This document shows positions 1 to 17,690 of a stretch of DNA of 17,690 nucleotides, piece after piece. The position numbers were made by a program, and so were the translations under genes. Location of the stretch: NCBI GenBank assembly GCA_002269645.1, contig NIVC01002809.1, positions 1 to 17,690 of the forward strand, read 5' to 3'. Source of the DNA: Macrostomum lignano. Its lineage: Eukaryota. The notes under the pieces were generated by a model. That model ran no database searches. It had not been told where the DNA came from and saw only the letters and a list, made by a program, of their open reading frames with translations. Position 1 is the stretch's first letter, and the number at the start of each line of letters is the position of its first letter.

Positions 1-89
1 CGCTAAATGCAATAATCGCTTTCTCAGGTTGTGCAACAATCCAGTCTCAGCGAGCGCAATATATCTCTTTTTTAGACAGCGCAGTAATC

Positions 90-1108
90 AGCTTCTCAAG
101 TGCAATAATCCTTGGTTTATTAATAGCAATAATCCTTGATTAATCAAGTGCAATAATCCTTGTTATCAAGTGCAATAATCCTTGGTTTATCAAGTGCAGT
201 AATCTTTGGCTTATCAAGTGCAATAATCCTTGGTTTATCAAGTGCAATAATCCTTTGTTTATCAAGTGCAATAATCCTTGGTTTATCAAGTGCAATAGTC
301 CTTTGTTTATCGAGTGCAGTAATCCTTAGTTTCCAAGTGCAGTAATCCTTGGTTTATTAAGAGCAATAATCCTTGGCTTATCGAGTGCAGTAATCCTTGG
401 TTTGCCAAGAGCAATAATCCTTGGTTTATCGAGTGCAGTAATCCTTAGTTTCCAAGTGCAGTAATCCTTGGTTTATTAAGAGCAATAATCCTTGGCTTAT
501 CGAGTGCAGTAGTCCTTGGTTTATTAATAGCAATAATCCTTGAATAATCCAGTGCATTAATCCTTGCTTATCAAGTGCAACATTCTTTACTATCAAGTGC
601 AATAATCCATGGCTTATCAAGCGCTGTAATCCTTGGCTTATCAAGTGCAATAATCCTTGGTTTATCAAGTGCAATAATCCTTGGTTTATCAAGTGCAATA
701 ATCCTTTGTTTATCAAGTGCAATAATCCTTGGTTTATCAAGCGCAGTAATCCTTGGCTTATCAAGTGCAGTAATCCTTGGTTTATCAAGTGCAATAATCC
801 TTGTTTATCAAGCGCAGTAATCTTTGGCCTATCAAGTGCAATAATCCTTGGTTTATCAAGTGCAGTAATCCTTGGCCTATCAAGTGCAATAATCCTTGGT
901 TTATCAAGTGCAATAGTCCTTGGTTTATCGAGTGCAGTAATCCTTGGTTTACCAAGTGCAATAATCCTTGTTTATTAATAGCAATAATCCTTGGCTTCTT
1001 GAGTGCAGTAATCCTTGGTTTGCCAAGAGCAATAGTCCTTGTTTATCAAGTGCAGTAGTCCTTGGTTTATTAATAGCAATAATCCTTGGCTTATCGAGTG
1101 CAGTAATC
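90..1108. repeat. Minisatellite A, 24-bp unit (CCTTGGTTTATCAAGTGCAATAAT and variants); degenerate copies continue to position 1
   Basis: Direct 24-bp periodicity, matching the 8-aa repeats (LSSAIILG) in the ORF track. Confidence 0.95.
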
Positions 1109-1169
1109 TAAGTGTTTTTATTTAGTCCTTTAATAAAACCTTTTAATAAAAAATTTTACACTACTACTT

Positions 1170-1241
1170 TTAAACTACTTAGATTCGAACCTAGGTCGCT
1201 GCATTAGCAGTCTGGTCTGTTCAGCTCTAGGCTAGCTCTCA
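1170..1241 (-). pseudogene. Degenerate tRNA-derived (Pol III A/B-box) cassette
   Basis: Minus strand reads TAGCCTAG...CCAGA CTGCTAA TGCAG CGAC CTAGG TTCGAAT CTAAG. B box GGTTCGAATC at 1182-1191 with tRNA-like spacing; D and anticodon stems do not pair. A T6 run follows at 1148-1153. Confidence 0.65.
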
Positions 1242-1497
1242 TCGAAGTTATCAGTGATGTTGTACCACTTATATAATTCAACACTCACACCAAGTCAGGT
1301 AGAGTAAAAAGTCTCACGAAGCAGTTATGACATAATCAATTTCTTAGGCAAGTCAGTACCAGTGTCTATGAAAGTTTACAATATGGTTACGTAATATAAA
1401 TTCAGTACTGCGCTATGCTTTCACACTCAAAGCTGTGACGCAATTCAATTGAGTGTCAAATTCAGCCAGTACACAGACGATAAATAAAGTGTATTGT

Positions 1498-1775
1498 GAT
1501 GCAATCTATTTTAGAATCAGAATTCAACCAGTCAGTTTTTCTGCTAGCATTCTTACAATGCATTTCGATGCTTGACCTTTGCAAAAAAGCATGTTTTTCG
1601 AATATTTAATCCCTTTAGCATCGAGAAATTTCTTAGCCACGATGCATGTACCGTCACGGAAAAATTTCTGATCGAATGGTGCAAGTTCGAAGAAAATCGG
1701 TTGAGCCATTTTTGCTAAAATCGATCACACACACACACACACACACATACCGACAGACCATTTTTAGTATATGGA
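1498..1775 (-). other. Conserved Helitron 5' core of about 280 bp (other copies 6896-7175, 9972-10247, 13041-13316, 16579-16862)
   Basis: Five homologous copies, each running from GATGCAATC to the TC terminus. Confidence 0.85.
1726..1747. repeat. (CA)11 microsatellite in the 5' end of unit 0
   Basis: Read directly from the sequence. Confidence 0.95.
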
Positions 1776-1804
1776 CTAGCTAAAGTTTTGCCCCCTTCGG
1801 GAGC
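1776..1804 (-). other. Helitron 3' terminus (hairpin plus CTAG) fused to TC of the next unit
   Basis: The plus strand reads GGA|CTAG-CTAAAGTTTT-GCCCCCTTCGGGAGC. Confidence 0.75.
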
Positions 1805-2353
1805 AGAAATAATTAATATTCGTCTAATATAATATACCTTTTAGCAGGAGTACTTTAAGTGTTTTTCTTAAGCTTAAGCTTAAAATAGGAATTTTTGGAG
1901 ATCGTTAATAACGCATTTTAGGTAAAACAAAACTATCAACTTTTTACAGTTTTTAGTTTAGAGCCCTGTATATGTCAACGTGTTTGATAAAAATTATTTT
2001 TATCATTTTTGATAAAAAATGGCCTTCGGGGTGGCCAATAAGCAAGGGACGAATCCTTTTAAATGAAAAAAAATTCTTAGGGAGGGGGGCTAGGAATCGA
2101 ATTCTCATTTTAATTCCAGGCTTATGTACCAATAAAACATGTTTGTGCAGAATTTTATAACAGACATTGAAATTCAACCATACTTGCCTTCTTTCAGAGC
2201 TACTTCTACCAGTATGCTTCAGTACGCTACCAGTACCCTTGTAAGCCTTGACATGTCAGCAATCCCCCCCACAAGCCTTAACATATCAACTCCCCCTTGA
2301 CATCTCAGCAATGCTCCCACAAGCCTTGAAATCTTAAAAAATCTGTCTATTTT

Positions 2354-2387
2354 CTAACCCTAACCCTAACCCTAACCCTAACCCTAA
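2354..2387 (-). repeat. Interstitial telomeric tract (TTAGGG), about 5.5 units
   Basis: CTAACC x5 plus CTAA on the plus strand. Confidence 0.9.
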
Positions 2388-2666
2388 AGCATTGAAATTT
2401 CAGTAATTCTCTCTAAGAGTCTATAGCACTACTACAGCATTATAGCGATTCCCTGCAAGCCTCGACATCGTAGGGATTCCCAAATGAATCTCTTAACTTT
2501 GACATGAAGCTTCTTTTTTTTTTACATTACGCTTTTTCTATCAGCGATCCCTCCCGTGAGGAGCCAACAAATAATGTAATAACTTTTTTCCAATAAACTA
2601 CATGTAGCTTCTGACATTAGCCTTGACATCTCATTTATTCCCCCGTGAGCCTTGACATCTCAGCTA

Positions 2667-2682
2667 TAGATAGATAGATAGA
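2667..2682. repeat. (TAGA)4 microsatellite, absent from the homologous site in units 2 and 3
   Basis: CAGCTATAGATAGATAGATAGATTCC here versus CAGCTATTCC at about 7736. Confidence 0.8.
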
Positions 2683-3334
2683 TTCCCCTCGTAAGCCTTG
2701 ACATGTCAGCGATGCCCCCCATAAACCTTGAAATCTAAAAAATCCCCTGTTAACCTTGAAACGCGCTAAAATCTAACCCTCAACCCAAACCTGACGTAAA
2801 CCTAACTTTCACCCAACCTAAAGCCTTGAAATCACAGCAATTCTTCTTCCCTAAGCCTTGGCATTTAAGTGATTCCTTCTTTAAGAATCACAGCACTATA
2901 ACGATTCCCTCCAAGCTTTGACATCGTAGCAATTCCCAAATGAATCTTTTAACTTTGACATGACTTTTATTTTATGTATACATAGTGCTCCTTTTATTTT
3001 TACATGACTCTTCTTCTATCAGCGCCCCCCCCCCCCGTGGCAAGCCAACAAAGAATGCAATAAAAAACTTAAGTAAAGTACATGTACTTTGAAGTAGCTT
3101 CTGACTTTTGCTTTAACATCTCAGAAACCCCCCTGTAATCTCAGTTATTCTCTGTGAGCCTTGACGTCTCAGTAATTCTCCCCAGCACAGCACTGTACTA
3201 TAGCTTCATTTAATTTTTATATGACATTTCTTTCATGTCTGACATGACGCTTCTTTTGATTTTTACGTTACGCTTCTTTTATTCTTCCATGATGCTTCTT
3301 AATTTTTTAAATGACACACTTTCATTAGTTTTTA

Positions 3335-4255
3335 TATGAGGCTTCTATAATTTTTTCATGACGCTTCTATGCTTGTTTACATGACGCTTGTATGATTTTT
3401 ACATGACGCTTCTATGATTGTTTACATGACGCTTGTATGATTGTTTACATGACGCTTCTATGATTTTTTACATGACGCTTTTATGATTTTTACATGACGC
3501 TTCTATGATTTTTTACATGACGCTTCTATGATTTTTACATGACGCTTCTATGATTTTTACATGACGCTTCTATGATTTTTACATGACGCTTCTATGATTT
3601 TTACATGACGCTTCTATGATTTTTTACATGACGCTTCTATGATTGTTTACATGACGCTTCTATGATTGTATACATGACGCTTCTATGATTGTTTACATGA
3701 CGCTTTTATGATTGTTTACATGACGCTTCTATGATTTTTACATGACGCTTCTATGATTTTTACATGACGCTTCTATGATTGTTTACATGACGCTTCTATG
3801 ATTGTTTACATGACGCTTCTATGATTTTAACATGACGCTTCTATGATTTTTTTACATGACGCTTCTATGATTGTTTACATGACGCTTGTATGATTGTTTA
3901 CATGACGCTTGTATGATTTTAACATGACGCTTCTATGATTGTTTACATTACGCTTCTATGATTGCTTGCATGACGCTTCTATGATTTTTTATGACGCTTT
4001 TATGATTTTAACATGACGCTTCTATGATTTTTTTACATGACGCTTCTATGATTGTTTACATGACGCTTGTATGATTGTTTACATGACGCTTTTATGATTT
4101 TAACATGACGCTTCTATGATTGTTTACATTACGCTTCTATGATTTTTACATGACGCTTCTATGATTTTTACATGACGCTTCTATGATTGTTTACATGACG
4201 CTTCTATGATTGTTTACATGACGCTTGTATGATTGTTTACATGACGCTTCCATAA
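3335..4255. repeat. Minisatellite B, 22-24 bp (CATGACGCTTCTATGATTGTTTA), about 40 copies
   Basis: Direct periodicity. Confidence 0.95.
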
Positions 4256-4296
4256 TTTTTTTGTCTTGGCGTTAAAAGGCTTTAATTAAAAAAACT

Positions 4297-4369
4297 CTAC
4301 TCTCTAAAAATTCGAACCATCGTCCCTGCATTTAGCAGTTTAGTCTGTTTACCTCTAGGCTAGCTCTCA
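4297..4369 (-). pseudogene. Degenerate tRNA-derived cassette, with its upstream region truncated
   Basis: B box GGTTCGAATT at 4309-4318 and TAGCCTAG at 4355-4362. Homologous to 9692-9764. Confidence 0.6.
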
Positions 4370-4394
4370 TGAATTTTAGTCATTACCCCTAAAT

Positions 4395-4620
4395 AGAAAA
4401 TATTCCCAAGACAGCAAGCATCCCCCCAGTAGCAAGCATCCCCTAATACTCCTAGCAAGCATCCACCCAGATAGCAAGCATCTGCAGATAGCAAGCATCT
4501 TGCAGATAGCAAGCATCTTGCAGATAGCAAGCATACCCCAAATAATGTAGAAGCATCCTTCCAGATAGCAAGCATCCTGCACATAGCAAGAATCCCTAAA
4601 TAGCAAGCATCCCTGGATAG
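4395..4620. repeat. Minisatellite C, 16-18 bp (GATAGCAAGCATCCnnnn), degenerate short array
   Basis: Repeated TAGCAAGCATCC. It begins with ATTCCCAAGACAGCAAGC, like the arrays at 13455 and 17001. Confidence 0.9.
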
Positions 4621-4645
4621 AAATAATCCTATACATGTAGCCAAG

Positions 4646-6502
4646 CTTATCAAGCGCAGTAATCCTTGGCTATCGAGTGCAGTAATCCTTGGTTTATTAA
4701 TAGCAATAATCCATGGCTTATCGAGTGCAGTAATCCTTGGTTTATTAATAGCAATAATCCTTGGCTTATCGAGTGCAGTAATTCATGGTTTATTAATAGC
4801 AATAATCCTTGGCTTATCGAGTGCAGTAATCCTTGGTTTATTAATAGCAATAATCCATGCCTTATCGAGTGCAGTAATCCTTGGTTTATTAATAGCAATA
4901 ATCCTTGGCTTATCGAGTGCAGTAATCCTTGGTTTATTAATAGCAATAATCCATGGCTTATCGAGTGCAGTAATCCTTGGTTTGCCAAGAGCAATAGTCC
5001 TTGGCTTATCGAGTGCAGTAATCCTTGGTTTGCCAAGAGCAATAGTCCTTGGTTTATTGAGTGCAGTAATCCTTGGTTTATTAATAGCAATAGTCCTTGG
5101 TTTATTGAGTGCAGTAATCCTTGGTTTATTAATAGCAATAATCCTTGGCTTATCGAGTGCAGTAATCCTTGGTTTGCCAAGTGCATAATCCTTGGTTTAT
5201 CGAGTGCAGTAATCCTTGGTTTATTAATAGCAATAATCCTTGGCTTATCGAGTGCAGTAATCCTTGGTTTATTAATAGCAATAATCCATGGCTTATCGAG
5301 TGCAGTAATCCTTGGTTTGCCAAGAGCAATAGTCCTTGGTTTATTGAGTGCAGTAATCCTTGGTTTATTAATAGCAATAGTCCTTGGTTTATTGAGTGCA
5401 GTAATCCTTGGTTTATTAATAGCAATAATCCTTGGCTTATCGAGTGCAGTAATCCTTGGTTTGCCAAGTGCATAATCCTTGGTTTATTAATAGCAATAAT
5501 CCTTGGCTTATCGAGTGCAGTAATCCTTGGTTTATTAATAGCAATAATCCTTGGTTTATCGAGTGCATAATCCTTGGTTTATTAATAGCAATAATCCTTG
5601 GCTTATCGAGTGCAGTAATCCTTGGTTTATTAATAGCAATAATCCTTGGCTTATCGAGTGCAGTAATCCTTGGTTTGCCAAGAGCAATAGTCCTTGGTTT
5701 TTGAGTGCAGTAATCCTTGGTTTATTAATAGCAATAGTCCTTGGTTTATTGAGTGCAGTAATGCTTGGTTTATTAATAGCAATAATCCTTGGCTTATCGA
5801 TTGCAGTAATCCTTGGTTTGCCAAGTGCATAATCCTTGGTTTATTAATAGCAATAATCCTTGGTTTATCGAGTGCAGTAATCCTTAGTTTATTAATAGCA
5901 ATAATCCTTGGCTTATCGAGTGCAGTAATCCTTGGTTTATTAATAGCAATAATCCATGGCTTATCGAGTGCAGTAATCCTTGGTTTGCCAAGAGCAATAG
6001 TCCTTGGCTTATCGAGTGCAGTAATCCTTGGTTTGCCAAGAGCAATAGTCCTTGGTTTATTGAGTGCAGTAATCCTTGGTTTATTAATAGCAATAGTCCT
6101 TGGCTTATCGAGTGCAGTAATCCTTGGTTTATTAATAGCAATAATCCTTGGTTATCGAGTGCAGTAATCCTTGGTTTATTAATAGCAATAATCCTTGGCT
6201 TATCGAGTGCAGTAATCCTTGGTTTATTAATAGCAATAATCCATGGCTTATGAGTGCAGTAATCCTTGGTTTATTAATAGCAATAATCCTTGGCTTATCG
6301 AGTGCAGTAATCATGGTTTATTAATAGCAATAATCCTTGGCTTATCGAGTGCAGTAATCCTTGGTTTATTAATAGCAATAATCCATGGCTTATCGAGTGC
6401 AGTAATCCTTGGTTTGCCAAGAGCAATAATCCTTGGCTTATCGAGTGCAGTATTCCTTGGTTTGCCAAGAGCAATAATCCTTGCTTATCGAGTGCAGTAA
6501 TC
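4646..6502. repeat. Minisatellite A array, mostly 48-bp dimers of two 24-bp variants (..TTAATAGCAATAAT / ..ATCGAGTGCAGTAAT)
   Basis: Direct periodicity. The right boundary (GCAGTAATCTAAGTG) is identical to that at 1108. Confidence 0.95.
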
Positions 6503-6563
6503 TAAGTGTTTTTATTTAGTCCTTTAATAAAAGCTTTTAATAAAAAATTTTACACTACTACTT

Positions 6564-6635
6564 TTAAACTACTTAGATTCGAACCCAGGTCGCTGCATTA
6601 GCAGTCTGGTCTGCTCAGCTCTAGGCTAGCTCTCA
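6564..6635 (-). pseudogene. Degenerate tRNA-derived cassette
   Basis: B box GGTTCGAATC at 6576-6585. Near-identical to 1170-1241. Confidence 0.65.
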
Positions 6636-7398
6636 TCGAAGTTATCAGTGAATTTGTACCACTTATATAATTAATTCAACACTCACACCAAGTCAGGTAG
6701 AGTAAAAAGTCACGCGAAGCAGTTATGACATAATCAATTTCTTAGGCAAGTCAGTACCAGTGTCTATGAAAGTTAACAATATGGTTACGTAATATAAATT
6801 CAGTACTGCACTATACTTTCACCCTCAAAGCTGTGACGCAATTCAATTGAGTGTCAAATTCAGCCAGTACACAGACGATAAATAAAGTGTATTGTGATGC
6901 AATCTATTTCAGAATCAGAATTCAACCAGTCAGATTTTTCTCTAGCATTCTTACAATGCATTTCAGGTCGAAAGAGCTGCTTGACCTTTGCAAAAAATCA
7001 TGTTTTTCGAATATTTAATGCCTTTAACATTGAGCAATTTCTTAGCCAATATGCATGTACCGTCCCGGGAAAATTTCTGATCGAATGGTGCAAGTTTGAA
7101 GAAAATCGGTTGAGCCGTTCGGGAGAAAATCAATTACAAGCAAGCAACCAAGCATTTCATTTTTAGTATATTAGACTAGCAATCTACGCCCCCCGTTGGG
7201 GAGCCAAAGAAATGCAATACACGTTTTTTTAATAAACTACATGTATCCTTGAAATCTTAAAAAATCTCCTGTCAAACCTTGTAAGCCTTGACATGTCAGT
7301 AATTCCCCCCCACAAGCTTTAACATATCAACTTCCCCCCTTGACATCTCAGCAATGCCCCCAATAAGCCTTGGAAATCTAAAAATATCTGTCAACCTT

Positions 7399-7460
7399 CT
7401 AACCCTAACCCTAGCCTAACCCTAACCCTAACCCTAACCCTAACCCTAACCTAACCCTAA
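7399..7460 (-). repeat. Interstitial telomeric tract (TTAGGG), about 10 units with two variant units
   Basis: CCCTAA repeats with one CCTAG and one 5-nt CCTAA unit. Confidence 0.92.
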
Positions 7461-8364
7461 AGCATTGAAATTTCAGTAATTCTCTCTAAGAGTCATTATA
7501 GCACTACTACAGCATTATAGCGATTCCCTGCAAGCCTCGACATCGTAGGATTCCCAAATGAATCTCTTAACTTCGACATGAAGCTTCTTTTATTTTTTAC
7601 ATTACGCTTTTTTTATCAGCGATCCCTCCCCTGAGGAGGCATCAAATAATGTAATAAAAAGTTTTCAATAAACTACATGTAGCTTCTGACTTTAGCCTTG
7701 AAATCTCATTTATACCCCCGTGAGCCTTGACATCTCAGCTATTCCCCCCGTAAGCCTTAACATGTCAGCGATGGCCCCCATAAACCTTGAAATCTAAAAA
7801 ATCCCCTGTTATTCTGTTAACCTTGAAACCGATAAAATATAACCCTCAACCCACACCTGACCTAAACCTAACTTTAACCCAACCTAAAGCCTTGAAATCT
7901 CAGCAATTCTTCTCCCCTAAGCCTTGACATTTTAGTGATTCCTTCTTTAAGAATCACAGCACTATAACGATTTCCACCAAGCTTTGACATCGTAGCAATT
8001 CCCAAATGAATCTTTTAACTTCGACATGACTTTTCTTTTATGTATACGTAGTGCTACTTTTATTTTTTACATGACTCTTCTTCTATCAGCGCCCCCCCGT
8101 GGCGAGCCAACAAAGAATGCAATAAAAAATTGAGTAAAGTACATGAACTTTGAAGTAGCTTCTGACTTTTGCTTTGACATCTCAGAACCCCCCCCCGTAA
8201 TCTCAGTTATTCTCTGAGAGCCTTTACGTCTCAGTTTTTCTCCCCAGCACAGCATTATAGCTGCATTTAATTTTTACATGACACCCTTCATGTCTGACAT
8301 GACGCTTCTTTTATTCTACCATGATGCTTCTTAATTTTTTAAATGACACTTTCATTAGTTTTTA

Positions 8365-9636
8365 AATGAGGCTTCTATGATTTTTTCATGACGCTTCTAT
8401 GATTTTTACATGACGCTTCTATGATTTTTATATGACGCTTCTATGATTGTTTATATGACGCTTCTATGATTTTTACATGACGCTTCTATGATTTTTTACA
8501 TGACGCTTCTATGATTGTTTACATGACGCTTCTATGATTGTTTACATGACGCTTCTATGATTGTTTACATGACGCTTCTATGATTTTTTACATGACGCTT
8601 CTATGATTTTTCATGACGCTTCTATGATTTTGCAGACGCTTCTATGATTTTTACATGACGCTTTATGATTTTTACATGACGCTTCTATGATTGTTTACAT
8701 GACGCTTCTATGATTGTTTATACGACGCTTCTATGATTTTTACATGACGCTTCTATGATTTTTACATGACGCTTCTATGATTGTTTACATGACGCTTCTA
8801 TGATTGTTTCATGACGCTTCTATGATTGTTTACATGACGCTTCTATGATTGTTTACATGACGCTTCTATGATTGTTTACATGACGCTTCTATGATTGTTT
8901 ATACGACGCTTCTATGATTTTTACATGACGCTTCTATGATTTTTACATGACGCTTCTATGATTTTTTACATGACGCTTCTATGATTGTTTCATGACGCTT
9001 CTATGATTGTTTACATGACGCTTCTATGATTTTTTACATGACGCTTCTATGATTGTTTACATGACGCTTCTATGATTGTTTATACGACGCTTCTATGATT
9101 TTTACATGACGCTTCTATGATTTTTACATGACGCTTCTATGATTTTTTACATGACGCTTCTATGATTGTTTCATGACGCTTCTATGATTTTTACATGACG
9201 CTTCTATGATTGTTTACATGACGCTTCTATGATTTTTTACATGACGCTTCTATGATTGTTTACATGACGCTTCTATGATTGTTTAATGACGCTTCTATGA
9301 TTGTTTACATGACGCTTCTATGATTTTTTACATGACGCTTCTATGATTGTTTACATGACGCTTCTATGATTGTTTACATGACGCTTCTATGATTTTTATA
9401 TGACGCTTCTATGATTGTTTACATGACGCTTCTATGATTGTTTACATGACGCTTCTATGATTGTTTAATGACGCTTCTATGATTGTTTACATGACGCTTC
9501 TATGATTGTTTACATGACGCTTCTATGATTGTTTACATGACGCTTCTATGATTTTTTACATGACGCTTCTATGATTGTTTACATGACGCTTCTATGATTT
9601 TTTACATGACGCTTCTATGATTTTTACATGACGATT
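8365..9636. repeat. Minisatellite B, about 55 copies
   Basis: Direct 22-24 bp periodicity. Confidence 0.95.
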
Positions 9637-9691
9637 CTTTTTAAAAAGTCTTTTAGTTTTCCTGACGTTGAAAAGCTTTAATTAAAAAATT

Positions 9692-9764
9692 ATACTCTAT
9701 GAAAATTCGAACCATCGTCGCTGCATTTAACAGTTCAGTTTGTTCACCTCTAGGCTAGCTCTCA
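9692..9764 (-). pseudogene. Degenerate tRNA-derived cassette
   Basis: B box at 9704-9713 and TAGCCTAG at 9750-9757. Confidence 0.6.
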
Positions 9765-10469
9765 TCGTTTTGATAACATCAAATTTTGCACTTATATAAT
9801 TCAACACTTTAAAATCCAAGCATAGAGTAAATCACACGAAGCAGTTATGACATAATCAGTTTCTCAGTCAGTCAGTATCAGTTAACAATATGGTTACGCA
9901 ATCTAAATCAAGTCTGGTGCTACGCTTCCACACTGCATTTTCAATTCAAGTCGGAGTTACAATTCAGTTATGATGCAATCTATTTCAGAATCAGAATTCA
10001 ACCAGTCAGTTTTTTCTCTAGCATTCTTACAATGCATTTCAAGTCGAAAAGTTTGCTTGACCTTTGCAAAAAAGCATGTTTTTCGAATATTTAATGCCTT
10101 TAGCATCAAGAAATTTCTTAGCCACGATGCATGTACAGTCACGGGAAAATTTCTGATCGAACAGTGCAAGTTCGAACAAAATCGGTACAGCCATTTTTTC
10201 TCTAATCGATCACATAGACACAGACAGACCATTTTTAGTATATAGGATAGCAATCTACGCCCCCCGTTGGGGAGCCAAAGAAATGCAATACACGTTTTTT
10301 TAATAAACTACATGTATCCTTGAAATCTTGAAAAATCTCCTGTCAAACCTTGTAAGCCTTGAATGTCAGTAATTCCCCCCCCACAAGCTTTAACATATCA
10401 ACTTCCCCCCTTGACATCTCAGCAATGCCCCAAATAAGCCTTGGAAATCTAAAAATATCTGTCAACCTT

Positions 10470-10531
10470 CTAACCCTAACCCTAGCCTAACCCTAACCCT
10501 AACCCTAACCCTAACCCTAACCTAACCCTAA
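10470..10531 (-). repeat. Interstitial telomeric tract (TTAGGG), about 10 units
   Basis: Same variant pattern as 7399-7460. Confidence 0.92.
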
Positions 10532-11434
10532 AGCATTGAAATTTCAGTAATTCTCTCTAAGAGTCATTATAGCACTACTACAGCATTATAGCGATTCCCT
10601 GCAAGCCTCGACATCGTAGAGATTCCCAAATGAATCTCTTAACTTCGACATGAAGCTTATTTTATTTTTTACATTACGCTTTTTTATCAGCGATCCCTCC
10701 CCAGAGGAGGCATCAAATAATGTAATAAAAAGTTTTCAATAAACTACATGTAGCTTCTGACTTTAGCCTTGAAATCTCATTTATACCCCGTGAACCTTGA
10801 CATCTCAGATATTCCCCCCGTAAGCTTAACATGTCAGCGATGGCCCCCATAAACCTTGAAATCTAAAAAATCCCTGTTATTCTGTTAACCTTGAAATCCG
10901 ATAAAATATAACCCTCAACCCACACCTGACCTAAACCTAACTTTAACCCAACCTAAAGCCTTGAAATCTCAGCAATTCTTCTCCCCTAAGCCTTGACATT
11001 TTAGTGATTCCTTCTTTAAGAATCACAGCACTATAACGATTTCCACCAAGCTTTGACATCGTAGCAATTCCCAAATGAATCTTTTAACTTCGACATGACT
11101 TTTCTTTTATGTATACGTAGTGCTACTTTTATTTTTTACATGACTCTTCTTCTATCAGCGCCCCCCCGTGGCGAGCCAACAAATAATGCAATAAAAAATT
11201 GAGTAAAGTACATGAACTTTGAAGTAGCTTCTGACTTTTGCTTTGACATCTCAGAACCCCCCCCCGTAATCTCAGTTATTCTCTGAGAGCCTTTACGTCT
11301 CAGTTTTTCTCCCCAGCACAGCATTATAGCTGCATTTAATTTTTACATGACACCCTTCATGTCTGACATGACGCTTCTTTTATTCTACCATGATGCTTCT
11401 TAATTTTTTAAATGACACTTTCATTAGTTTTTAA

Positions 11435-12705
11435 ATGAGGCTTCTATGATTTTTTCATGACGCTTCTATGATTTTTACATGACACTTCTATGATTTTTAT
11501 ATGACGCTTCTATGATTGTTTATATGACGCTTCTATGCTTTTTACATGACGCTTCTATGATTTTTTACATACGCTTCATGATTGTTTACATGACGCTTCT
11601 ATATTGTTTACATGACGCTTCTATGATTGTTTACATGACGCTTCTATGATTTTTTACATGACGCTTCTATGATTTTTTCATGACGCTTCTACGATTTCTG
11701 CAGGACGCTTCTATGATTTTTACATGACGCTTCTATGATTGTTTACATGACGCTTCTATGATTGTTTACATGACGCTTCTATGATTGTTTATACGACGCT
11801 TCTATGATTTTTACATGACGCTTCTATGATTTTTACATGACGCTTCTATGATTGTTTACATGACGCTTCTATGATTGTTTCATGACGCTTCTATGATTGT
11901 TTACATGACGCTTCTATGATTGTTTACATGACGCTTCTATGATTGTTTACATGACGCTTCTATGATTGTTTACGACGCTTCTATGATTTTTACATGACGC
12001 TTCTATGCTTTTTACATGACGCTTCTATGATTTTTTACATGACGCTTCTATGATTGTTTCATGACGCTTCTATGATTGTTTACATGACGCTTCTATGATT
12101 TTTTACATGACGCTTCTATGATTGTTTACATGACGCTTCTATGATTGTTTACGACGCTTCTATGATTTTTACATGACGCTTCTATGCTTTTTACATGACG
12201 CTTCTATGATTTTTTACATGACGCTTCTATGATTGTTTCATGACGCTTCTATGATTGTTTACATGGCGCTTCTATGATTGTTTACATGACGCTTCTATGA
12301 TTTTTTACATGACGCTTCTATGATTGTTTACATGACGCTTCTATGATTGTTTAAATGACGCTTCTATGATTGTTTACATGACGCTTCTATGATTTTTACA
12401 TGACGCTTCTATGATTGTTTACATGACGCTTCTATGATTGTTTACATGACGCTTCTATGATTTTTATATGACGCTTCTATGATTGTTTACATGACGCTTC
12501 TATGATTGTTTACATGACGCTTCTATGATTGTTTAAATGACGCTTCTATGATTGTTTACATGACGCTTCTATGATTGTTTACATGACGCTTCTATGATTG
12601 TTTACATGACGCTTCTATGATTTTTTACATGACGCTTCTATGATTGTTTACATGACGCTTCTATGATTTTTTACATGACGCTTCTATGATTTTTACATGA
12701 CGATT
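11435..12705. repeat. Minisatellite B, about 55 copies
   Basis: Direct periodicity; duplicate of 8365-9636. Confidence 0.95.
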
Positions 12706-12760
12706 CTTTTTAAAAAGTCTTTTAGTTTTCCTGACGTTGAAAAGCTTTAATTAAAAAATT

Positions 12761-12833
12761 ATACTCTATGAAAATTCGAACCATCGTCGCTGCATTTAAC
12801 AGTTCAGTTTGTTCACCTCTAGGCTAGCTCTCA
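12761..12833 (-). pseudogene. Degenerate tRNA-derived cassette
   Basis: B box at 12773-12782. Copy of 9692-9764. Confidence 0.6.
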
Positions 12834-13316
12834 TCGTTTTGATAACATCAAATTTTGCACTTATATAATTCAACACTTTAAAATCCAAGCATAGAGTAAA
12901 TCACACGAAGCAGTTATGACATAATCAGTTTCTCAGTCAGTCAGTATCAGTTAACAATATGGTTACGCAATCTAAATCAAGTCTGGTGCTACGCTTCCAC
13001 ACTGCATTTTCAATTCAAGTCGGAGTTACAATTCAGTTATGATGCAATCTATTTCAGAATCAGAATTCAACCAGTCAGTTTTTTCTCTAGCATTCTTACA
13101 ATGCATTTCAAGTCGAAAAGTTTGCTTGACCTTTGCAAAAAAGCATGTTTTTCGAATATTTAATGCCTTTAGCATCAAGAAATTTCTTAGCCACGATGCA
13201 TGTACAGTCACGGGAAAATTTCTGATCGAACAGTGCAAGTTCGAACAAAATCGGTACAGCCATTTTTTCTCTAATCGATCACATAGACACAGACAGACCA
13301 TTTTTAGTATATAGGA

Positions 13317-13345
13317 CTAGCAATCTTCGCCCCCCGATGGGGGGC
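13317..13345 (-). other. Helitron 3' terminus with perfect hairpin
   Basis: The minus strand reads GCCCCCCATCGGGGGGC-GAAGATTG-CTAG|TC. Confidence 0.82.
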
Positions 13346-13454
13346 ATCTAGATAGAATCTCTGGCACTCTACAAGTATCAAAAAGACGGCCAAATAAAGC
13401 CTTCACATAGACAATAGAAAAACTGCTCAAATGAAGTGCAATGCAAAAAAATAT

Positions 13455-14548
13455 CCCAGGACAGCAAGCAACCCCCAGATAGCAAGCACCCCCAGATAGC
13501 AAGCATCCACCTAATAGCAAGCACCCTTAGATAGCAAGCATCCCAGATAGCAAGCACCCTTGGATGCAAGGCAAGCATCTCCAGATAGCAAGCACCCCCA
13601 GATAGCAGGCACCCCAGATAGCAAGCATCCACCTAATAGCAAGCACCCCAAGATAGCAAGCATCCACCTAATAGCAAGCACCCTTAGATAGCAAGCACCC
13701 CCAGATAGCAAGCACCCCCAGATAGCAAGCACCCCAAGTAGCAAGCATCTCTAGATAGCAAGCACCCCAGATAGCAGGCACCCAGATAGCAAGCATCCAC
13801 CTAATAGCAAGCACCCCAAGATAGCAAGCATCCACCTAATAGCAAGCACCCTTAGATAGCAAGCACCCCCAGATAGCAAGCACCCCCAGATAGCAAGCAT
13901 CTCCAGATAGCAAGCACCCCCAGATAGCAAGCATCCACCTAATAGCAAGCACCCCCAGATAGCAAGCATCCACCTAATAGCAAGCACCCCCAGATAGCAA
14001 GCATCCACCTAATAGCAAGCACCCCCAGATAGCAAGCACCCCCAGATAGCAAGCACCCCCAGATAGCAAGCATCTCTAGATAGCAAGCACCCCCAGATAG
14101 CAGGCACCCAGATAGCAAGCATCCACCTAATAGCAAGCACCCCCAGATAGCAAGCATCTCCAGATAGCAAGCACCCCAGATAGCAGGCACCCCAGATAGC
14201 AAGCATCCACCTAATAGCAAGCACCCCAGATAGCAAGCACCCCAGATAGCAAGAACCCCAGATAGCAGGCACCCCAGATAGCAAGCATCCACCTAATAGC
14301 AAGCACCCCAGATAGCAAGCACCCCCAGATAGCAAGCACCCCCAGATAGCAAGCACCCCCAGATAGCACGCATCTCCAGATAGCAAGCACTCCAAGATAG
14401 CAGGCACCCCAGATAGCAAGCATCCACCTAATAGCAAGCACCCCCAGATAGCTAGAACCCCAAGATAGCAAGCATCCCCCCAGATAGCAAGCACCCCCAG
14501 ATAGCACGCATCTCCAGATAGCAAGCACTCCAAGATAGTAGGCACCCC
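13455..14548. repeat. Minisatellite C, 16-18 bp (GATAGCAAGCACCCCCA / GATAGCAAGCATCCACCT), about 60 copies
   Basis: Direct periodicity. Confidence 0.95.
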
Positions 14549-16270
14549 ATTTATGTTTGACATGGTAGCTGTTTTGTGTCTGACATGGTGGCTCTTTAAT
14601 GTTTGAGCTGGTGGCTCTTTTATGTTTGACATGGTGGCACTTTAATGTCTGAAATGGAGTCATGTATACGCTTGACATGGTGACTCGTAGATGTTTGACA
14701 AAGTGGCTCTTTTATGTTCGACATGTGGCTCTTTAATGTTTGACATGGTGGCTCTTTAATGTTTGACATGGTGGCTCTTTAATGTTTGACATGGTGGCTC
14801 TTTAATGTTTGACATGGTGGGTCTTTAATTTATGACATGGTGGCTCTTTTATGTTTGACATGATGGCTCTTTAATGTTCGACATGGTGGCTGTTTAATGT
14901 TTGTTATGTAGTCATATGTATATGTTTTACATGGTGGCTCTTTTATGTGTGACATGGAGTCACGTATATATTTGACATGGAGTCACATATGTTTGACATG
15001 GTGGCTCTTTAGTGTTCGATATGGTGGCTCTTTAATGTTTGACATGGTGGCTCTTTTATGTTTGACATAGTGGCTCTTTAATGTTGACATGGTGGCTCTT
15101 TAATGTTTGACATGGTGGCTCTTTTATGTTTGACATGATGGCTCTTTAATGTTCGACATGGTGGGCTGTTTAATGTTTGTTATGTAGTCATATGTATATG
15201 TTTTACATGGTGGCCCTTTTATGTGTGACATGGAGGCACGTATATATTCGACATGGAGTCACATATGTTTGACATGGTGGCTCTTTAGTGTTCGATATGG
15301 TGGCTCTTTAATGTTTGACATGGTGGCTCTTTAATGTCTGACATGGTGGCTCTTTAATGTTTGACATGGTGGCTCTTTTATGTTCGACATGTTGGCTCTT
15401 TAGTGTTTGACATGGCTCTTTAATGTTTGACATGGTGGCTCTTTTATGCTTGACATGGTGGCTCTTTAATGTTCGACATGGTGGCTCTTTAATGTTTGAC
15501 ATGGTGGCTCTTTTATGCTTGACATGGTGGCTCTTTATGTTCGACATGGTGGCTCTTTTTTGTTCTACATGGTAACTCTTTTATGTTTGATACGGTGGCT
15601 TTTTAATATCTGACATTGTGGCTCTTCTATGTTTGACATTGTGGCTCTTTTATGTTTGACATGGTGGCTCTTTAATGTTTGACATGGTGGCTCTTTAATG
15701 TACGACATAAAGGTTCGTTTATGTTCGACATGGTGGCTCTTTTAGGTTTGACATGGTAGCTCTTTTATGTTCGACATGGTGGCTCTTTTAGGTTTGACAT
15801 GGTGGCTCTTTTAGGTTTGACATGGTAGCTCTTTTATGTTCGACATGGTGGCTCTTAAATGTTTCACATGATGGCTCTTAAATGTCTTACATGGTGGCTC
15901 TTTTATGTTTGACAATGTGGCTCTTTAATGTTTTACATGGCGGCTCTTTTATGTTCGAAATGGTGGCTCTTTAATGTTCGACATGGTGGCTCTTTAATGT
16001 TTGACATGCTAGCTCTTTAATGTTCGACATAGTGGCTCTTTTATGTTTGGCATGGTGGCTCTTTAATGTTCTTCATGGTGGCTCTTTTACGTTTGACATG
16101 GTGGCACTTTAATGTTCGACGTGGTGGCTCTTTAATGTTCGAAATGGTGACTCTTTAATGTTTCACATGGTGGCTCTTTAATGTTTGACATAGAGTCACG
16201 TATTTGTTTTACATGGTGCCCATGTAATGTTTGACATGGTGCCTCTTTTATGTTTGACATTGTGCTTTTT
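14549..16270. repeat. Minisatellite D, 23 bp (TTGACATGGTGGCTCTTTAATGT), about 75 copies
   Basis: Direct periodicity. Confidence 0.95.
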
Positions 16271-16317
16271 TATGTTTAGCAGTTTCGTGTTTTCAAGGTG
16301 TTTTATAAAAAATTATT

Positions 16318-16389
16318 TTGCACTACTAAGATTCGAACCCAGGTCGCTACGTTGGCAGTCCAGTCTGTTCGTATCTAGGCTATCTCTTT
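16318..16389 (-). pseudogene. Degenerate tRNA-derived cassette (best-preserved geometry, Gln/His-like framework)
   Basis: Minus strand reads TAGCCTAG ATACGAACAGA CTGGA CTGCCAA CGTAG CGAC CTGGG TTCGAAT CTTAG. The T-stem pairs with G-U wobbles, and a T6 run follows at 16307-16312. Confidence 0.68.
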
Positions 16390-17000
16390 TCAATTGGAGT
16401 ACATGAATTGTGGCCCTTATAATTAAATTCTTACAGCAAGTCAATTGGGGTAAAAAGTTATGACATAATCAATTTCTCAGTCAGCCAGTATCAGTCTCAG
16501 TTCAAGTTAGCAATATTGGTTACGCAATTTTAATCAAGTCGTGTGTGCATTTCTTCGGCACTGTTTTCAACTTGTTGTGATGCAATCTTTATCACAATCA
16601 GAATTCAGCCAGTCAGTTTTTTTCTCTAGCATTCTTACAATGAATTTTAGGTCGAAAGAGCTGCTTGACCTTTGCAAAAAAGCATGTTTTTCGAATATTT
16701 AATCCCTTTATCATTGAGCAATTTTTTAGCCAAGATGCATGTACCGTCCAGGAAAATTTCTGATCGAATGGTGCAAGTTTGAAGAAAATCGGTTGAGCCA
16801 TTTTTTCTGAAATCTATCGCATACCTACCCACATACAGACAACTCATTTTTAGTATATAGGACTAGCAATCTTTGCCCCCCGATGGGGGACATCTGGATA
16901 GAACTTCTGTCTCTACAAGTAAAAAAACCGCCAAATAGAGTCTTCACAAAGACAACAGAAAAAAAACTGCTCAAATGAAGCGCAATGCAAAAGAAAACAT

Positions 17001-17220
17001 CCCAAGACAGCAAGCATCCCCCCTCCTCCCAGATAGCAAGCACCCCCAGATAGCAAGCACCCCCAGATAGCAAGCACCCCCAGATAGCAAGCACCCCCAG
17101 ATAGCAAGCACCCCAGATAGCAAGCACCCCAGATAGCAAGCACTCCCAGATAGCAAGCACCCCCAGCAAGCCCCAGATAGCAAGCACCCCAGATAGAAAA
17201 ACCCCAGATAGCAAGTATCT
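17001..17220. repeat. Minisatellite C, short array
   Basis: GATAGCAAGCACCCC(C)A repeats. Confidence 0.93.
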
Positions 17221-17324
17221 TTCCTTAAATGCAAGCAGACAAAAAGTATATAGTGCAATTTCCTTTTAGCTTTCTAGGGGCTCCTTTATGATTGGCATGA
17301 CGCTTCTTATTACGTTTGAAAATG

Positions 17325-17690
17325 TCTCTCCTGTGTTTGAAATGGTGACTATTTTTATGTTTGAATTGGTGGCTTTTAAATGTTTGGCATGGTGACTCTT
17401 TAATGTCTACATGGTGGCTCTTTAATGTTTGACATCGTGCCAGTATTTATGTTTGTCATGGTGGCTCCTTAATGTTAGAAACGGTGGCTCTTTAATGTTT
17501 GACATGGAGTCACATATATGTTTCACATGGTGGCTCTTCTATGTCTAACTTGTTAGCTCTTTTATGTTTATTGGCTCGTTAATGTTCGACATGGTGGCTC
17601 TTTAACGTTCGACATGGTGGCTCTTTTAATGTTCGACATGCTGGCTCTTTAATGTTTGACATGGCGCTCTTTAATGTTCAACATGGTGGC
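17325..17690. repeat. Minisatellite D, degenerate start, continuing beyond the window
   Basis: CATGGTGGCTCTTTAATGTT repeats. Confidence 0.9.

What the first reader, a model, noticed from the sequence alone, without database searches (positions are those of the whole stretch)
1760..16891. Head-to-tail Helitron concatemer with precise CTAG|TC junctions hidden under the satellites
At 1775/1776, 7175/7176, 13316/13317 and 16862/16863 (and 10247/10248, missing one base) the minus strand reads GC hairpin, 8-10 nt, CTAG, then immediately TC(C/T)...ATACTAAAAATG and a microsatellite (seen). Hairpin plus CTRR is the canonical Helitron 3' end and TC the 5' end. A direct CTAG-TC fusion, rather than an A|T insertion site, is the junction expected from rolling-circle intermediates, and such tandem Helitron arrays are known (established). 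The apparent satellite region is therefore a multi-kb macrosatellite built from mobile units (inference).
Basis: partly seen in the sequence, partly recalled or inferred. Interest (0 to 1): 0.85.

Follow-up and report, generated by a model that had tools for sequence, protein, structure and literature searches.

The report
Head-to-tail array of satellite-carrying Helitrons
The apparent satellite region is a chain of at least six different non-autonomous Helitron transposons joined end to start. This arrangement is known in other genomes, is very common in this one, and looks more like repeated insertion at the starts of resident copies than copying of one circle.

Summary
On the minus strand, five junctions read GC hairpin, 8-10 nt, CTAG (once CTA), then TC..ATATACTAAAAATG and a microsatellite.

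The units are real canonical Helitrons. Solo copies and whole arrays elsewhere in the genome are flanked A|TC...CTAG|T. Empty sites match the joined flanks at 98-100% with no target-site duplication. A 9.1-kb copy with the same ends encodes Rep plus a PIF1 helicase, similar to Helraiser, and no endonuclease.

About 30% (899 of 2,982) of intact 5' ends genome-wide sit in an exact CTAG|TC junction, often in runs.

The "concatemer/macrosatellite" reading is only partly right. Neighbouring units are mostly different families. Only E2 and E3 are near-identical (98.8%). In a second array, the units are no closer to each other than to copies elsewhere.

Host DNA just 3' of insertions mimics the element's own 5' end (T-N5-7-CTAW in 16 of 21 sites against 2.3% background). 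The best explanation is therefore iterative insertion at resident 5' ends, plus occasional local duplication.

This is a known kind of structure, so interest is moderate.

The parts
1..1775 (-). E0, cut by the contig start. 5' terminus TCCATATACTAAAAATGG at 1775, (TG)n microsatellite, 5' arm 1109-1775, and a 24-bp satellite 'satA' at 96-1108.
1776..7175 (-). E1, 5,400 bp, a chimeric family. In element order: 5' arm 6503-7175, satA (48-bp period) 4647-6502, satB-like 17-bp repeats 4380-4629, the last 110 bp of an L3-type arm at 4261-4370, satC (23 bp) 3213-4260, complex module 2237-3212, own 3' region 1776-2236 with hairpin 1790-1804 and terminal CTAG 1776-1779. A 99.3-99.5% identical copy lies in an array on contig C59.
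7176..10247 (-). E2, 3,072 bp. 5' arm 9639-10247, satC 8297-9638, complex module 7277-8296 containing (TTAGGG)n at 7399-7460, hairpin 7188-7204, CTAG 7176-7179.
10248..13316 (-). E3, 3,069 bp, 98.8% identical to E2. 5' arm 12708-13316, satC 11366-12707, complex module 10348-11365, hairpin 10259-10275. The 3' terminus reads CTA because the final G is missing.
13317..16862 (-). E4, 3,546 bp, 79% satellite. 5' arm 16278-16862, satD (23 bp) 14550-16277, satB (17 bp) 13463-14548, 3' arm 13317-13462 with hairpin 13329-13345 and CTAG 13317-13320. It is a deletion derivative of the Rep/Hel-encoding element type found at C40.
16863..17690 (-). E5, 3' part only; it is complete in contig C1706. 3' arm 16863-17008 with hairpin 16875-16891 and CTAG 16863-16866, satB 17028-17215, satD 17334-17690.
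1774..1779 (-). Junction E1|E0: CTAG|TC.
7174..7179 (-). Junction E2|E1: CTAG|TC. The same type of pairing, an E3-type 3' end joined to an E1-type 5' end, recurs on contig C59.
10246..10250 (-). Junction E3|E2: CTA|TC, one base short. The same deletion is present in C1706.
13315..13320 (-). Junction E4|E3: CTAG|TC. The same R4-type|L3-type pairing is found at 29 or more other loci, with shuffled subtypes.
16861..16866 (-). Junction E5|E4: CTAG|TC.

Best explanation
The window is the whole 17.7-kb contig C2809. It lies inside an array of at least nine head-to-tail Helitron units on the minus strand, six of them in the window.

Each large unit is a non-autonomous canonical (HLE1-type) Helitron with this layout:
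- a 5' TC terminus with a conserved TC..ATATACTAAAAATG left end;
- a short microsatellite;
- a ~0.6-kb 5' arm;
- one to three short-period (17-48 bp) satellite arrays making up 44-79% of the unit;
- a 3' arm with a 15-17-nt GC hairpin 8-10 nt before the terminal CTAG.

The units are mobilised in trans by Rep/PIF1-helicase Helitrons of the same genome. Those autonomous-type copies carry the same ends and already contain the satD and satB arrays. These points are shown.

How the array was built is inferred. The transposase nicks target DNA 5' of a T that is followed by a sequence resembling its own left end (A|T-N5-7-CTAWA). The left end of a resident copy is the best possible such target. A newcomer therefore inserts exactly between the host A (or a preceding 3' end) and the resident's TC. 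This creates a precise CTAG|TC junction without any rolling-circle multimer. Repetition of this step, with different family members, builds heterogeneous arrays.

Occasional local duplication, or back-to-back insertion from one master copy, adds near-identical neighbours (E2/E3). Deletions or end-bypass across a junction create new chimeric families (E1) that then spread.
For: Element identity:
- 5' ends are preceded by A in 67 of the first 100 non-G cases.
- 3' ends are followed by T in 99 of 100 cases.
- Joined flanks of three insertions are uninterrupted elsewhere at 80/80, 78/80 and 78/80 nt, with no TSD. Four further insertions have paralogous empty sites that span the join.
- A 9,093-bp copy at C40 is bounded by the same ends. 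It carries Helitron_like_N (1e-46), PIF1 helicase domains and satD-satB-R4, with no ORF after the helicase.
- Its Rep region matches Helraiser 7LCC at 6e-45.
- The genome holds at least 150 Rep domains, several inside uninterrupted 1,250-1,690-aa frames.

Frequency:
- 899 of 2,982 intact 5' ends (30%) lie in exact CTAG|TC junctions.
- Of the first 100 junctions, 54 lie in runs of 2-7 on contigs of 0.7-1.5 Mb.

Independent insertions rather than copying:
- 5' arms of neighbouring types are about 74% identical and their satellites differ.
- E4's 3' arm is 100% identical to copies on three other contigs but only 83% identical to its neighbour E5.
- Across 29 loci, identities of the R4 and L3 partners do not co-vary; they are if anything inversely related (read from the table, not computed).
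- In the C59 array, three E3-type units are 93.6-96% identical to each other and 93-97% identical to the window's copies. Two E4-type units are 87.7% identical to each other and about 90.4% identical to the window's E4.

Target mimicry:
- T-N5-7-CTA[AT] starts at the first 3' flank base in 16 of 21 insertions, against 2.3% of background AT sites (p 1e-22).
- CTA starts at flank positions 7-9 in 50 of 76 non-junction 3' flanks.
- 3' flanks align to the left-end sequence better than shuffles do (10.2 against 9.08 +/- 0.14).
- The motif is host DNA, because it is uninterrupted in the empty sites.
- Near-miss junctions and short 5'-end stubs in front of full copies are common.
- Helraiser also shows a target preference biased to the 3' flank (PMC4778049).
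- The A|T-at-resident-5'-end model was proposed for maize (PMC2267711).
Against: - No intermediate state (a resident alone versus a resident plus newcomer at the same locus) was observed, so the order and direction of array growth are inferred.
- E2/E3 are 98.8% identical with equal satellite lengths. This fits a dimeric rolling-circle product or unequal crossing-over as well as it fits two successive insertions.
- Survivorship could inflate insertions inside repeats, although it cannot explain base-exact junctions.
- The 66-nt E0-type stub upstream of E5, with a complete E0 downstream of E1, is not explained by simple insertion.
- The counts come from an indel-rich long-read assembly with redundant contigs.
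- Only exact-motif ends were counted, and only the first 100 listed places were inspected.
Confidence: 0.62

Rival explanations
1. Rolling-circle concatemer. Failure to terminate at the 3' end during rolling-circle replication yields multimeric head-to-tail DNA, which integrates as a block. The CTAG|TC joints would then be circle-junction sequences.
For: - E2 and E3 are 98.8% identical over 3.07 kb, with identical 609-bp 5' arms and satellites of equal length.
- Helraiser makes circles with exactly this joint, and tandem arrays in bats and plants have been read this way (PMC4778049, PMC5876387).
Against: - A multimer of one circle must be homogeneous at birth, but four of the five junctions in the window join different or clearly diverged units.
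- Units in the C59 array are no closer to each other than to copies elsewhere.
- E4's closest relatives are dispersed copies, not its neighbour.
Confidence: 0.15
2. Composite transposition. A dimer or multimer formed once, then spread as a single unit because the internal 3' end is bypassed and transposition ends at the next 3' end. The many junctions would then be copies of a few founder junctions.
For: - The same order satD-satB-R4|L3-satC-R2 is seen at 29 or more dispersed loci.
- The C12 dimer is flanked as one unit, A|TC...CTAG|T.
- The chimeric E1 type, itself a fusion of two units, has transposed: a 99.3-99.5% identical copy sits on C59.
- 3' end bypass is documented for Helraiser (PMC4778049).
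Against: - The query spanned the junction and so selected for that pairing.
- Subtypes of the two partners are shuffled between loci: R4 100% with L3 94-95% or with an L1-type arm, and L3 100% with R4 82-87%.
- Satellite lengths next to the junction differ widely between loci.
- This model does not explain the left-end-like target motif.
Confidence: 0.15
3. Unequal crossing-over or segmental duplication after ordinary insertions. This would explain the array as a classical macrosatellite expansion.
For: - The E2/E3 pair.
- Satellite-rich, mutually similar units offer many substrates for misalignment.
- Multi-kb 'satDNA' monomers annotated as Helitron are reported in Crassostrea gigas (PMC8268682).
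Against: - It cannot create base-exact CTAG|TC joints between heterologous units.
- It cannot explain 899 such joints genome-wide.
- Units differ in type and length: 5.4, 3.07, 3.07 and 3.55 kb.
Confidence: 0.1
4. Assembly artefact. A short contig made only of repeats could be a mis-join or a collapse of dispersed copies.
For: - The window is a whole 17.7-kb contig.
- Differences from its twin contig are mostly 1-bp indels, which indicates noisy long reads.
Against: - Contig C1706 reproduces four of the window's five junctions (window 5807-17690), including the defective one, and extends the array to host DNA.
- Arrays of the same kind lie inside contigs of 0.7-1.5 Mb.
Confidence: 0.03
5. The units are Helentron-type (HLE2) HINEs, like Cg_HINE of the Pacific oyster, rather than canonical Helitrons.
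For: - A microsatellite of the (GTCY) kind sits right after the 5' end, and central satellite-like repeats are present, as in HINEs (PMC7492417, PMC4067079).
- E1 has a 12-nt subterminal inverted match with one mismatch.
- 23% of non-G 5' flanks end in T.
Against: - E2, E3 and E4 have no inverted repeat of 10 nt or more between the ends.
- The ends are TC and hairpin-CTAG, and insertion is A|T.
- The coding copy has no endonuclease, and its Rep matches Helraiser.
Confidence: 0.05

Closest known systems
Head-to-tail Helitrons of maize (Du et al. 2008, PMC2267711), Myotis bats (Pritham & Feschotte 2007) and plant centromeres (Xiong et al. 2016, cited in PMC7492417)
   Same: There is a direct CTAG|TC (G/T) junction with no host base between the elements. 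As in maize, the neighbours can be unrelated Helitrons. The same two origin models apply: rolling-circle tandem repeats or consecutive insertion.
   Different: Here the junction is a mass phenomenon, at about 30% of intact 5' ends and in runs of up to eight or more units. The units are mostly satellite DNA.
Cg_HINE / Helitron-N_CGi elements of Crassostrea gigas (PMC7492417, PMC8268682), 'pearl'-type bivalve elements and DINE-1/DINE-TR1
   Same: The modular layout is shared: a conserved left box, a (GTCY)-like microsatellite, central tandem repeats sometimes of two kinds in a fixed order, and a right box with a hairpin. The elements carry satellite DNA through the genome.
   Different: Those elements are classed as Helentron-associated, with 11-12-nt subterminal inverted repeats, TT insertion and mostly 140-180-bp monomers. 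The present units have canonical TC/CTAG ends, A|T insertion, 17-48-bp monomers and a partner without an endonuclease. No sequence identity to published boxes was found.
Helraiser / Helibat1 (PMC4778049, PMC5876387; structure 7LCC)
   Same: Both have TC and hairpin-CTAG ends, A|T targets and no TSD. Both show target preference strongest on the 3' flank, and occasional non-AT targets. The Rep domain is similar (6e-45).
   Different: Helraiser shows only general AT-richness around the target, whereas a positioned CTAW motif is seen here. Helibat elements carry captured gene fragments rather than satellites.
Bacterial HUH transposons IS91 and IS608 (from general knowledge; both named in PMC5876387)
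   Same: They work alike. A single-strand HUH nuclease uses the same short sequence rule for cleaving its own end and for choosing the target, so elements tend to land next to end-like sequences and next to each other.
   Different: They are different protein families with tetranucleotide targets. This is an analogy only.

Membership tests
Canonical Helitron (HLE1) | 5' terminus TC | tested here: met
   All six units in the window and 2,982 genomic copies start TC..ATATACTAAAAATG. Empty sites place the boundary exactly before TC.
Canonical Helitron (HLE1) | 3' terminus CTRR | tested here: met
   The terminus is CTAG in four units and CTA in one. Empty sites place the boundary exactly after CTAG.
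Canonical Helitron (HLE1) | Short palindrome about 10-12 nt from the 3' end | tested here: met
   A 15-17-nt GC palindrome with a 6-7-bp stem and a 3-nt loop ends 12-14 nt from the terminus in all five units. The folding z-score is only -1.1 to -2.5, because shuffles of G/C runs also pair.
Canonical Helitron (HLE1) | Insertion between A and T without target-site duplication | tested here: met
   Among the first 100 non-G 5' flanks: A 67, T 23, C 10. The 3' flank is T in 99 of 100. Joined flanks are uninterrupted at 98-100% identity with the same length.
Canonical Helitron (HLE1) | No terminal inverted repeats | tested here: met
   E2, E3 and E4 have no match of 10 nt or more with at most one mismatch between the first 40 nt and the last 160 nt. 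E1 has one 12-nt match with one mismatch.
Canonical Helitron (HLE1) | Autonomous partner with the same ends encoding Rep and a PIF1-like helicase, without an endonuclease | tested here: met
   The 9,093-bp C40 copy has PF14214, PF05970, PF21530 and PF13538, with nothing after the helicase, and its Rep matches Helraiser. The reading frame of that copy is broken into pieces; other loci have 1,250-1,690-aa open frames whose ends were not examined.
Canonical Helitron (HLE1) | Transposition through a single-stranded or circular intermediate | not testable with these tools
   This needs circle detection or transposition assays.
Helentron / HINE (HLE2) | 11-18-nt terminal or subterminal inverted repeats | tested here: not met
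   Absent in three of the four complete units.
Helentron / HINE (HLE2) | Insertion between T and T | tested here: not met
   T precedes the element in only 23 of 100 non-G cases; A predominates.
Helentron / HINE (HLE2) | Partner encodes a C-terminal endonuclease (Helentron) | tested here: not met
   No domain or ORF follows the helicase in the C40 copy. Only one coding copy was examined.
Helentron / HINE (HLE2) | Microsatellite after the 5' end and central tandem repeats | tested here: met
   This is a resemblance in layout and is not sufficient for membership.
Rolling-circle concatemer (tandem repeat of one Helitron) | Neighbouring units are copies of the same element | tested here: not met
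   This holds only for E2/E3 (98.8%). The other neighbours are different types or clearly diverged, with arms 74-92% identical. In the C59 array the same-type units are 88-96% identical, no closer than to distant copies.
Rolling-circle concatemer (tandem repeat of one Helitron) | Precise CTAG|TC joint with no host base | tested here: met
   The same joint is also produced by insertion at a resident 5' end, so it is not diagnostic.
Macrosatellite | Homogeneous multi-kb unit repeated in tandem | tested here: not met
   The units are 5.4, 3.07, 3.07 and 3.55 kb and of different composition.

The most novel reading that the evidence does not exclude
This Helitron family may choose targets that imitate its own left end (A|T-N5-7-CTAWA). 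If so, resident left ends are the preferred landing sites, and heterogeneous head-to-tail arrays grow one unit at a time at their 5' side. That would be a self-targeting rule explaining Helitron tandem arrays without rolling-circle multimers. It would also turn satellite-loaded Helitrons into builders of long satellite-rich blocks. With about 900 junctions and apparently intact Rep/Hel genes, this genome would make the question open since 2007-2008 (multimer or consecutive insertion) directly testable.
Probability: 0.5. Interest if true: 0.6.

Novelty: new member of a known kind. Interest (0 to 1): 0.42.

Why it matters
- It shows that a stretch which reads as several unrelated satellites is in fact a chain of mobile elements. 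This matters for repeat annotation, for assembly of such regions, and for ideas on how satellite DNA spreads.
- The genome-wide numbers and the left-end-like target motif give a concrete, testable mechanism for Helitron tandem arrays, which have been reported in bats and plants.
- The chimeric E1 family illustrates how neighbouring Helitrons fuse into new mobile composites.

Tried and rejected
- tRNA and RNA families. ARAGORN and Rfam (E up to 1) found nothing in the window. The tRNA-like look of part of the 5' arm therefore remains an impression.
- Named oyster families. A search for the termini in the supplements of the two oyster papers and in the full-text library found nothing relevant. 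No link to a named Repbase family could be made, and the host species was not identified.
- Data limits. Flanks were therefore sampled through printed pattern matches and 100-nt fetches.
- TSD hypothesis. Same-locus flanks are more alike than cross-locus flanks (p 1.5e-4), but the empty sites already contain both copies. This is a property of the targets, not a duplication made on insertion.
- Extended 3' end. The idea that the true 3' end lies at the downstream CTAA was rejected for the same reason.
- Allelic empty site. A search for an allelic empty site of a 20-kb array on C12 found only 86% paralogues, so it does not settle block versus stepwise insertion.
- 5' flank motif. A CTAWA motif on the 5' flank was considered. 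Only position -1 (A) and position -2 (never G) are constrained.

Full report
**Observation.** The window is the complete 17,690-bp contig C2809 of a 764-Mb, 5,269-contig eukaryotic assembly. A fifth site, at 10247/10248, reads GGATAG. On the minus strand every site reads a 15-17-nt GC palindrome, 8 or 10 nt, CTAG (once CTA), then TC..ATATACTAAAAATG and a microsatellite.

**Anatomy.** Self-comparison and Tandem Repeats Finder divide the window into six units on the minus strand.
- E0 (1-1775, cut by the contig start) has a 5' arm and a 24-bp satellite, satA.
- E1 (1776-7175) has, in order: 5' arm, satA, 17-bp satB-like repeats, only the last 110 bp of another type's 5' arm, the 23-bp satC, a 1-kb complex module, and its own 3' region.
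- E2 (7176-10247) and E3 (10248-13316) have a 5' arm, satC, the complex module and a 3' end.
- E4 (13317-16862) has a 5' arm, the 23-bp satD, the 17-bp satB and a 146-bp 3' arm.
- E5 (16863 to the contig end) is of the E4 type.

Satellites make up 44-79% of each complete unit. The 5' arms of different types are about 74% identical. E2 and E3 are 98.8% identical over their full length, with 13 mismatches and 24 gap bases.

**Are the units mobile elements with these boundaries?** Yes.
- In the genome the left-end motif TCNNATATACTAAAAATG occurs 2,982 times, against 0 for the reversed control. It is preceded by A, C or T 1,949 times and by G 1,033 times. In the first 100 non-G places the preceding base is A 67 times, T 23 times and C 10 times.
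- In the first 100 places listed for the right-end motif GGGCNNAGATTGCTAG, the next base is T in 99.
- I paired left and right ends on large contigs and fetched 100-nt flanks for 20 solo elements or arrays. Joining 70 nt of each flank and searching the genome found uninterrupted copies spanning the join for seven of ten loci: 100% over 140 nt, 99% over 140 nt, 98% over 132 nt, and several paralogues at 88-99%.
- Base-by-base alignment shows no gain or loss at the join. This means precise insertion between A and T with no target-site duplication.
- E2, E3 and E4 have no inverted repeat between their ends.
- These are the defining features of canonical Helitrons as listed in PMC4067079 and PMC11417382.

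**Autonomous partner.** The genome has at least 150 Helitron_like_N matches, several inside open frames of 1,250-1,690 aa. One match lies between two exact junctions on contig C40. That 9,093-bp unit has:
- the first ~300 bp of the 5' arm;
- pieces encoding Helitron_like_N and PIF1-helicase domains;
- satD, satB and the R4 3' arm.

Nothing follows the helicase, so there is no Helentron-type endonuclease. The Rep part matches Helraiser (7LCC) at 6e-45. The E4/E5 type is thus a deletion derivative of a coding Helitron that already carries two of the satellites.

**How common are the junctions?** Exactly CTAG precedes 899 of the 2,982 left ends, which is 30%; about 12 are expected by chance. Of the first 100 such junctions, 54 lie in same-strand runs of 2-7, spaced mostly 2.8-5 kb apart, on contigs of 0.7-1.5 Mb.
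- Contig C1706 overlaps the window (98.66% identity over 11.9 kb, with differences mostly single-base indels). Over that overlap it reproduces four of the window's five junctions, including the CTA|TC one.
- C1706 also extends the array 5'-wards: host DNA ending in A, two tandem 352-bp Helitrons of another family, a 66-nt stub of an E0-type left end, then E5.
- The structure is therefore not an artefact of one small contig, although raw reads could not be checked.

**Concatemer or consecutive insertions?** A multimer from one circle should be homogeneous. That is not what is seen.
- Four of the five junctions in the window join different or clearly diverged units.
- E4's 3' arm is 100% identical to copies on three other contigs but only 83% identical to that of its neighbour E5.
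- Across 29 loci with an R4|L3 junction, the subtypes of the two partners are shuffled.
- In a second array on C59, of eight or more units, three E3-type units are 93.6-96% identical to each other, no closer than to the window's copies. Two E4-type units are 87.7% identical to each other, less than either is to the window's E4.
- That array also holds a copy of the chimeric E1 type that is 99.3-99.5% identical to the window's. E1 is therefore a mobile family born from a fusion of two units, not a local accident.

**Target sites.** In non-junction 3' flanks the trinucleotide CTA starts at flank positions 7-9 in 50 of 76 cases. In 16 of 21 characterised insertions the flank begins T-N5-7-CTA[AT], against 2.3% of other AT sites (p 1e-22).
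- The flanks align to the element's left end (T CCTATATA CTAAAAATG) better than composition-matched shuffles do.
- The motif belongs to the host, because it is present in the empty sites.
- On the 5' side only position -1 (A) and position -2 (never G) are constrained.
- Many flanks are near-misses of a resident left end, or short left-end stubs followed by a full copy.
- Helraiser likewise shows its strongest target preference on the 3' flank (PMC4778049).

The simplest reading is that the nuclease applies the same sequence rule to targets as to its own left end. A resident left end is then the best target. Insertion there gives host-A|new element|resident, with a base-exact CTAG|TC joint. This is the model Du et al. 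put forward for two adjacent maize Helitrons (PMC2267711). It is inference; no intermediate state was observed.

**Comparison with what is known.**
- Head-to-tail Helitrons with this joint are established in bats, maize and plant centromeres (PMC2267711, PMC5876387, PMC7492417).
- Helitron-type elements that carry a microsatellite and satellite-like repeats are well described in oysters and Drosophila (PMC7492417, PMC8268682, PMC4067079). Multi-kb 'satDNA' monomers annotated as Helitron are listed for Crassostrea gigas (PMC8268682).
- The present elements share the HINE-like layout but fail the Helentron tests: inverted repeats, TT target and endonuclease. They pass all testable canonical-Helitron tests.

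The finding is a new member of a known kind. What may be new is the scale (30% of left ends) and the left-end-like target motif.

**Limits.**
- The host species was not identified.
- Counts rest on exact motifs, and flank statistics on the first 100 listed places.
- The assembly is indel-rich and redundant.
- The E2/E3 pair, the 66-nt stub and the direction of array growth remain unresolved.

Noticed in passing
window 2354-2387, 7399-7460, 10470-10531: Runs of CTAACC on the + strand, which read (TTAGGG)n on the element strand, at 5.7-10.7 copies. They sit inside the 'complex' module of E1, E2 and E3, so interstitial telomere-type repeats are being carried by a Helitron.
   Followed up: no
window 1183-1242, 4310-4370, 6577-6636, 9705-9765, 12774-12834, 16316-16380 (minus strand): The inner part of the 5' arm looks tRNA-derived, with a B-box-like GGTTCGAATC and a TAGCCTAGA stretch. 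ARAGORN and Rfam report nothing. The stretch is absent from the coding copy at C40, which keeps only the first ~300 bp of the arm.
   Followed up: partly
window 1776-7175 (E1); L083-L085 (C59:386328-391379): E1 is a chimera of two unit types with the junction between them deleted. A 99.3-99.5% identical copy lies in another array, so fused neighbours can become new mobile families.
   Followed up: yes
window 2237-3212, 7277-8296, 10348-11365: The 'complex' module is an imperfect internal duplication of about 450 bp (67-70% identity). It is built of C-rich 30-bp motifs of the form ...CCTTGACATCTCAG....
   Followed up: no
L074 2701-2766 (C1706:27700-27765) and window 1700-1775: A 66-nt stub identical to the E0 left end, including its (TG)n, lies directly upstream of E5. 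A complete E0 follows E1. A simple insertion of the block E5-E1 into an E0-type copy does not predict this.
   Followed up: partly
L074 2000-2700 (C1706:26999-27699): Two head-to-tail copies of a 352-bp Helitron of another family (about 94% identical to each other) form the 5' end of the same array. They start TCTAAATATACTAAATC, have the hairpin GCTGGCAGCCAGC and end CTAG. The same right end precedes an E3-type unit on C59.
   Followed up: partly
L033-L072 flanks; L076 (C35:755932-756111): The last ~15 nt of the 5' flank and the first ~15 nt of the 3' flank of the same insertion are often imperfect direct repeats (p 1.5e-4). An example is TGATTACACTTAAACAA|TGATTACCTAAAAATG. The repeat is already present in the empty site, so the targets tend to be short imperfect tandem duplications. 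The reason is unknown.
   Followed up: partly
C1:781178, C13:325391, C28:249470 (printed matches): At three loci the same 379-bp 3'-truncated copy ends ...GCGTAACCATA and is followed at once by a new left end. This is a secondary insertion hotspot at an A|T inside the 5' arm.
   Followed up: no
G000 C111:321657, C1359:107484, C1486:139620, C229:16843, C366:454519, C1445:215934: Rep domains lie inside uninterrupted frames of about 1,560-1,690 aa. This suggests Helitrons that are intact or were active recently. Their ends were not examined.
   Followed up: no
window versus C1706:29329-41240: The window contig duplicates the end of a 41-kb contig at 98.66% identity, with 36 mismatches and 124 gap bases in 106 openings. 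It is either an unmerged overlap or a haplotig, and the assembly shows residual indel noise.
   Followed up: yes
L031+L032 9352-12213 (C12:959351-962212): A 2.9-kb element of a further Helitron-like family is nested inside the satD array of a dimer. Its left end is TCTACCTATAAAAATCAAAAC followed by (TCTG)n.
   Followed up: no
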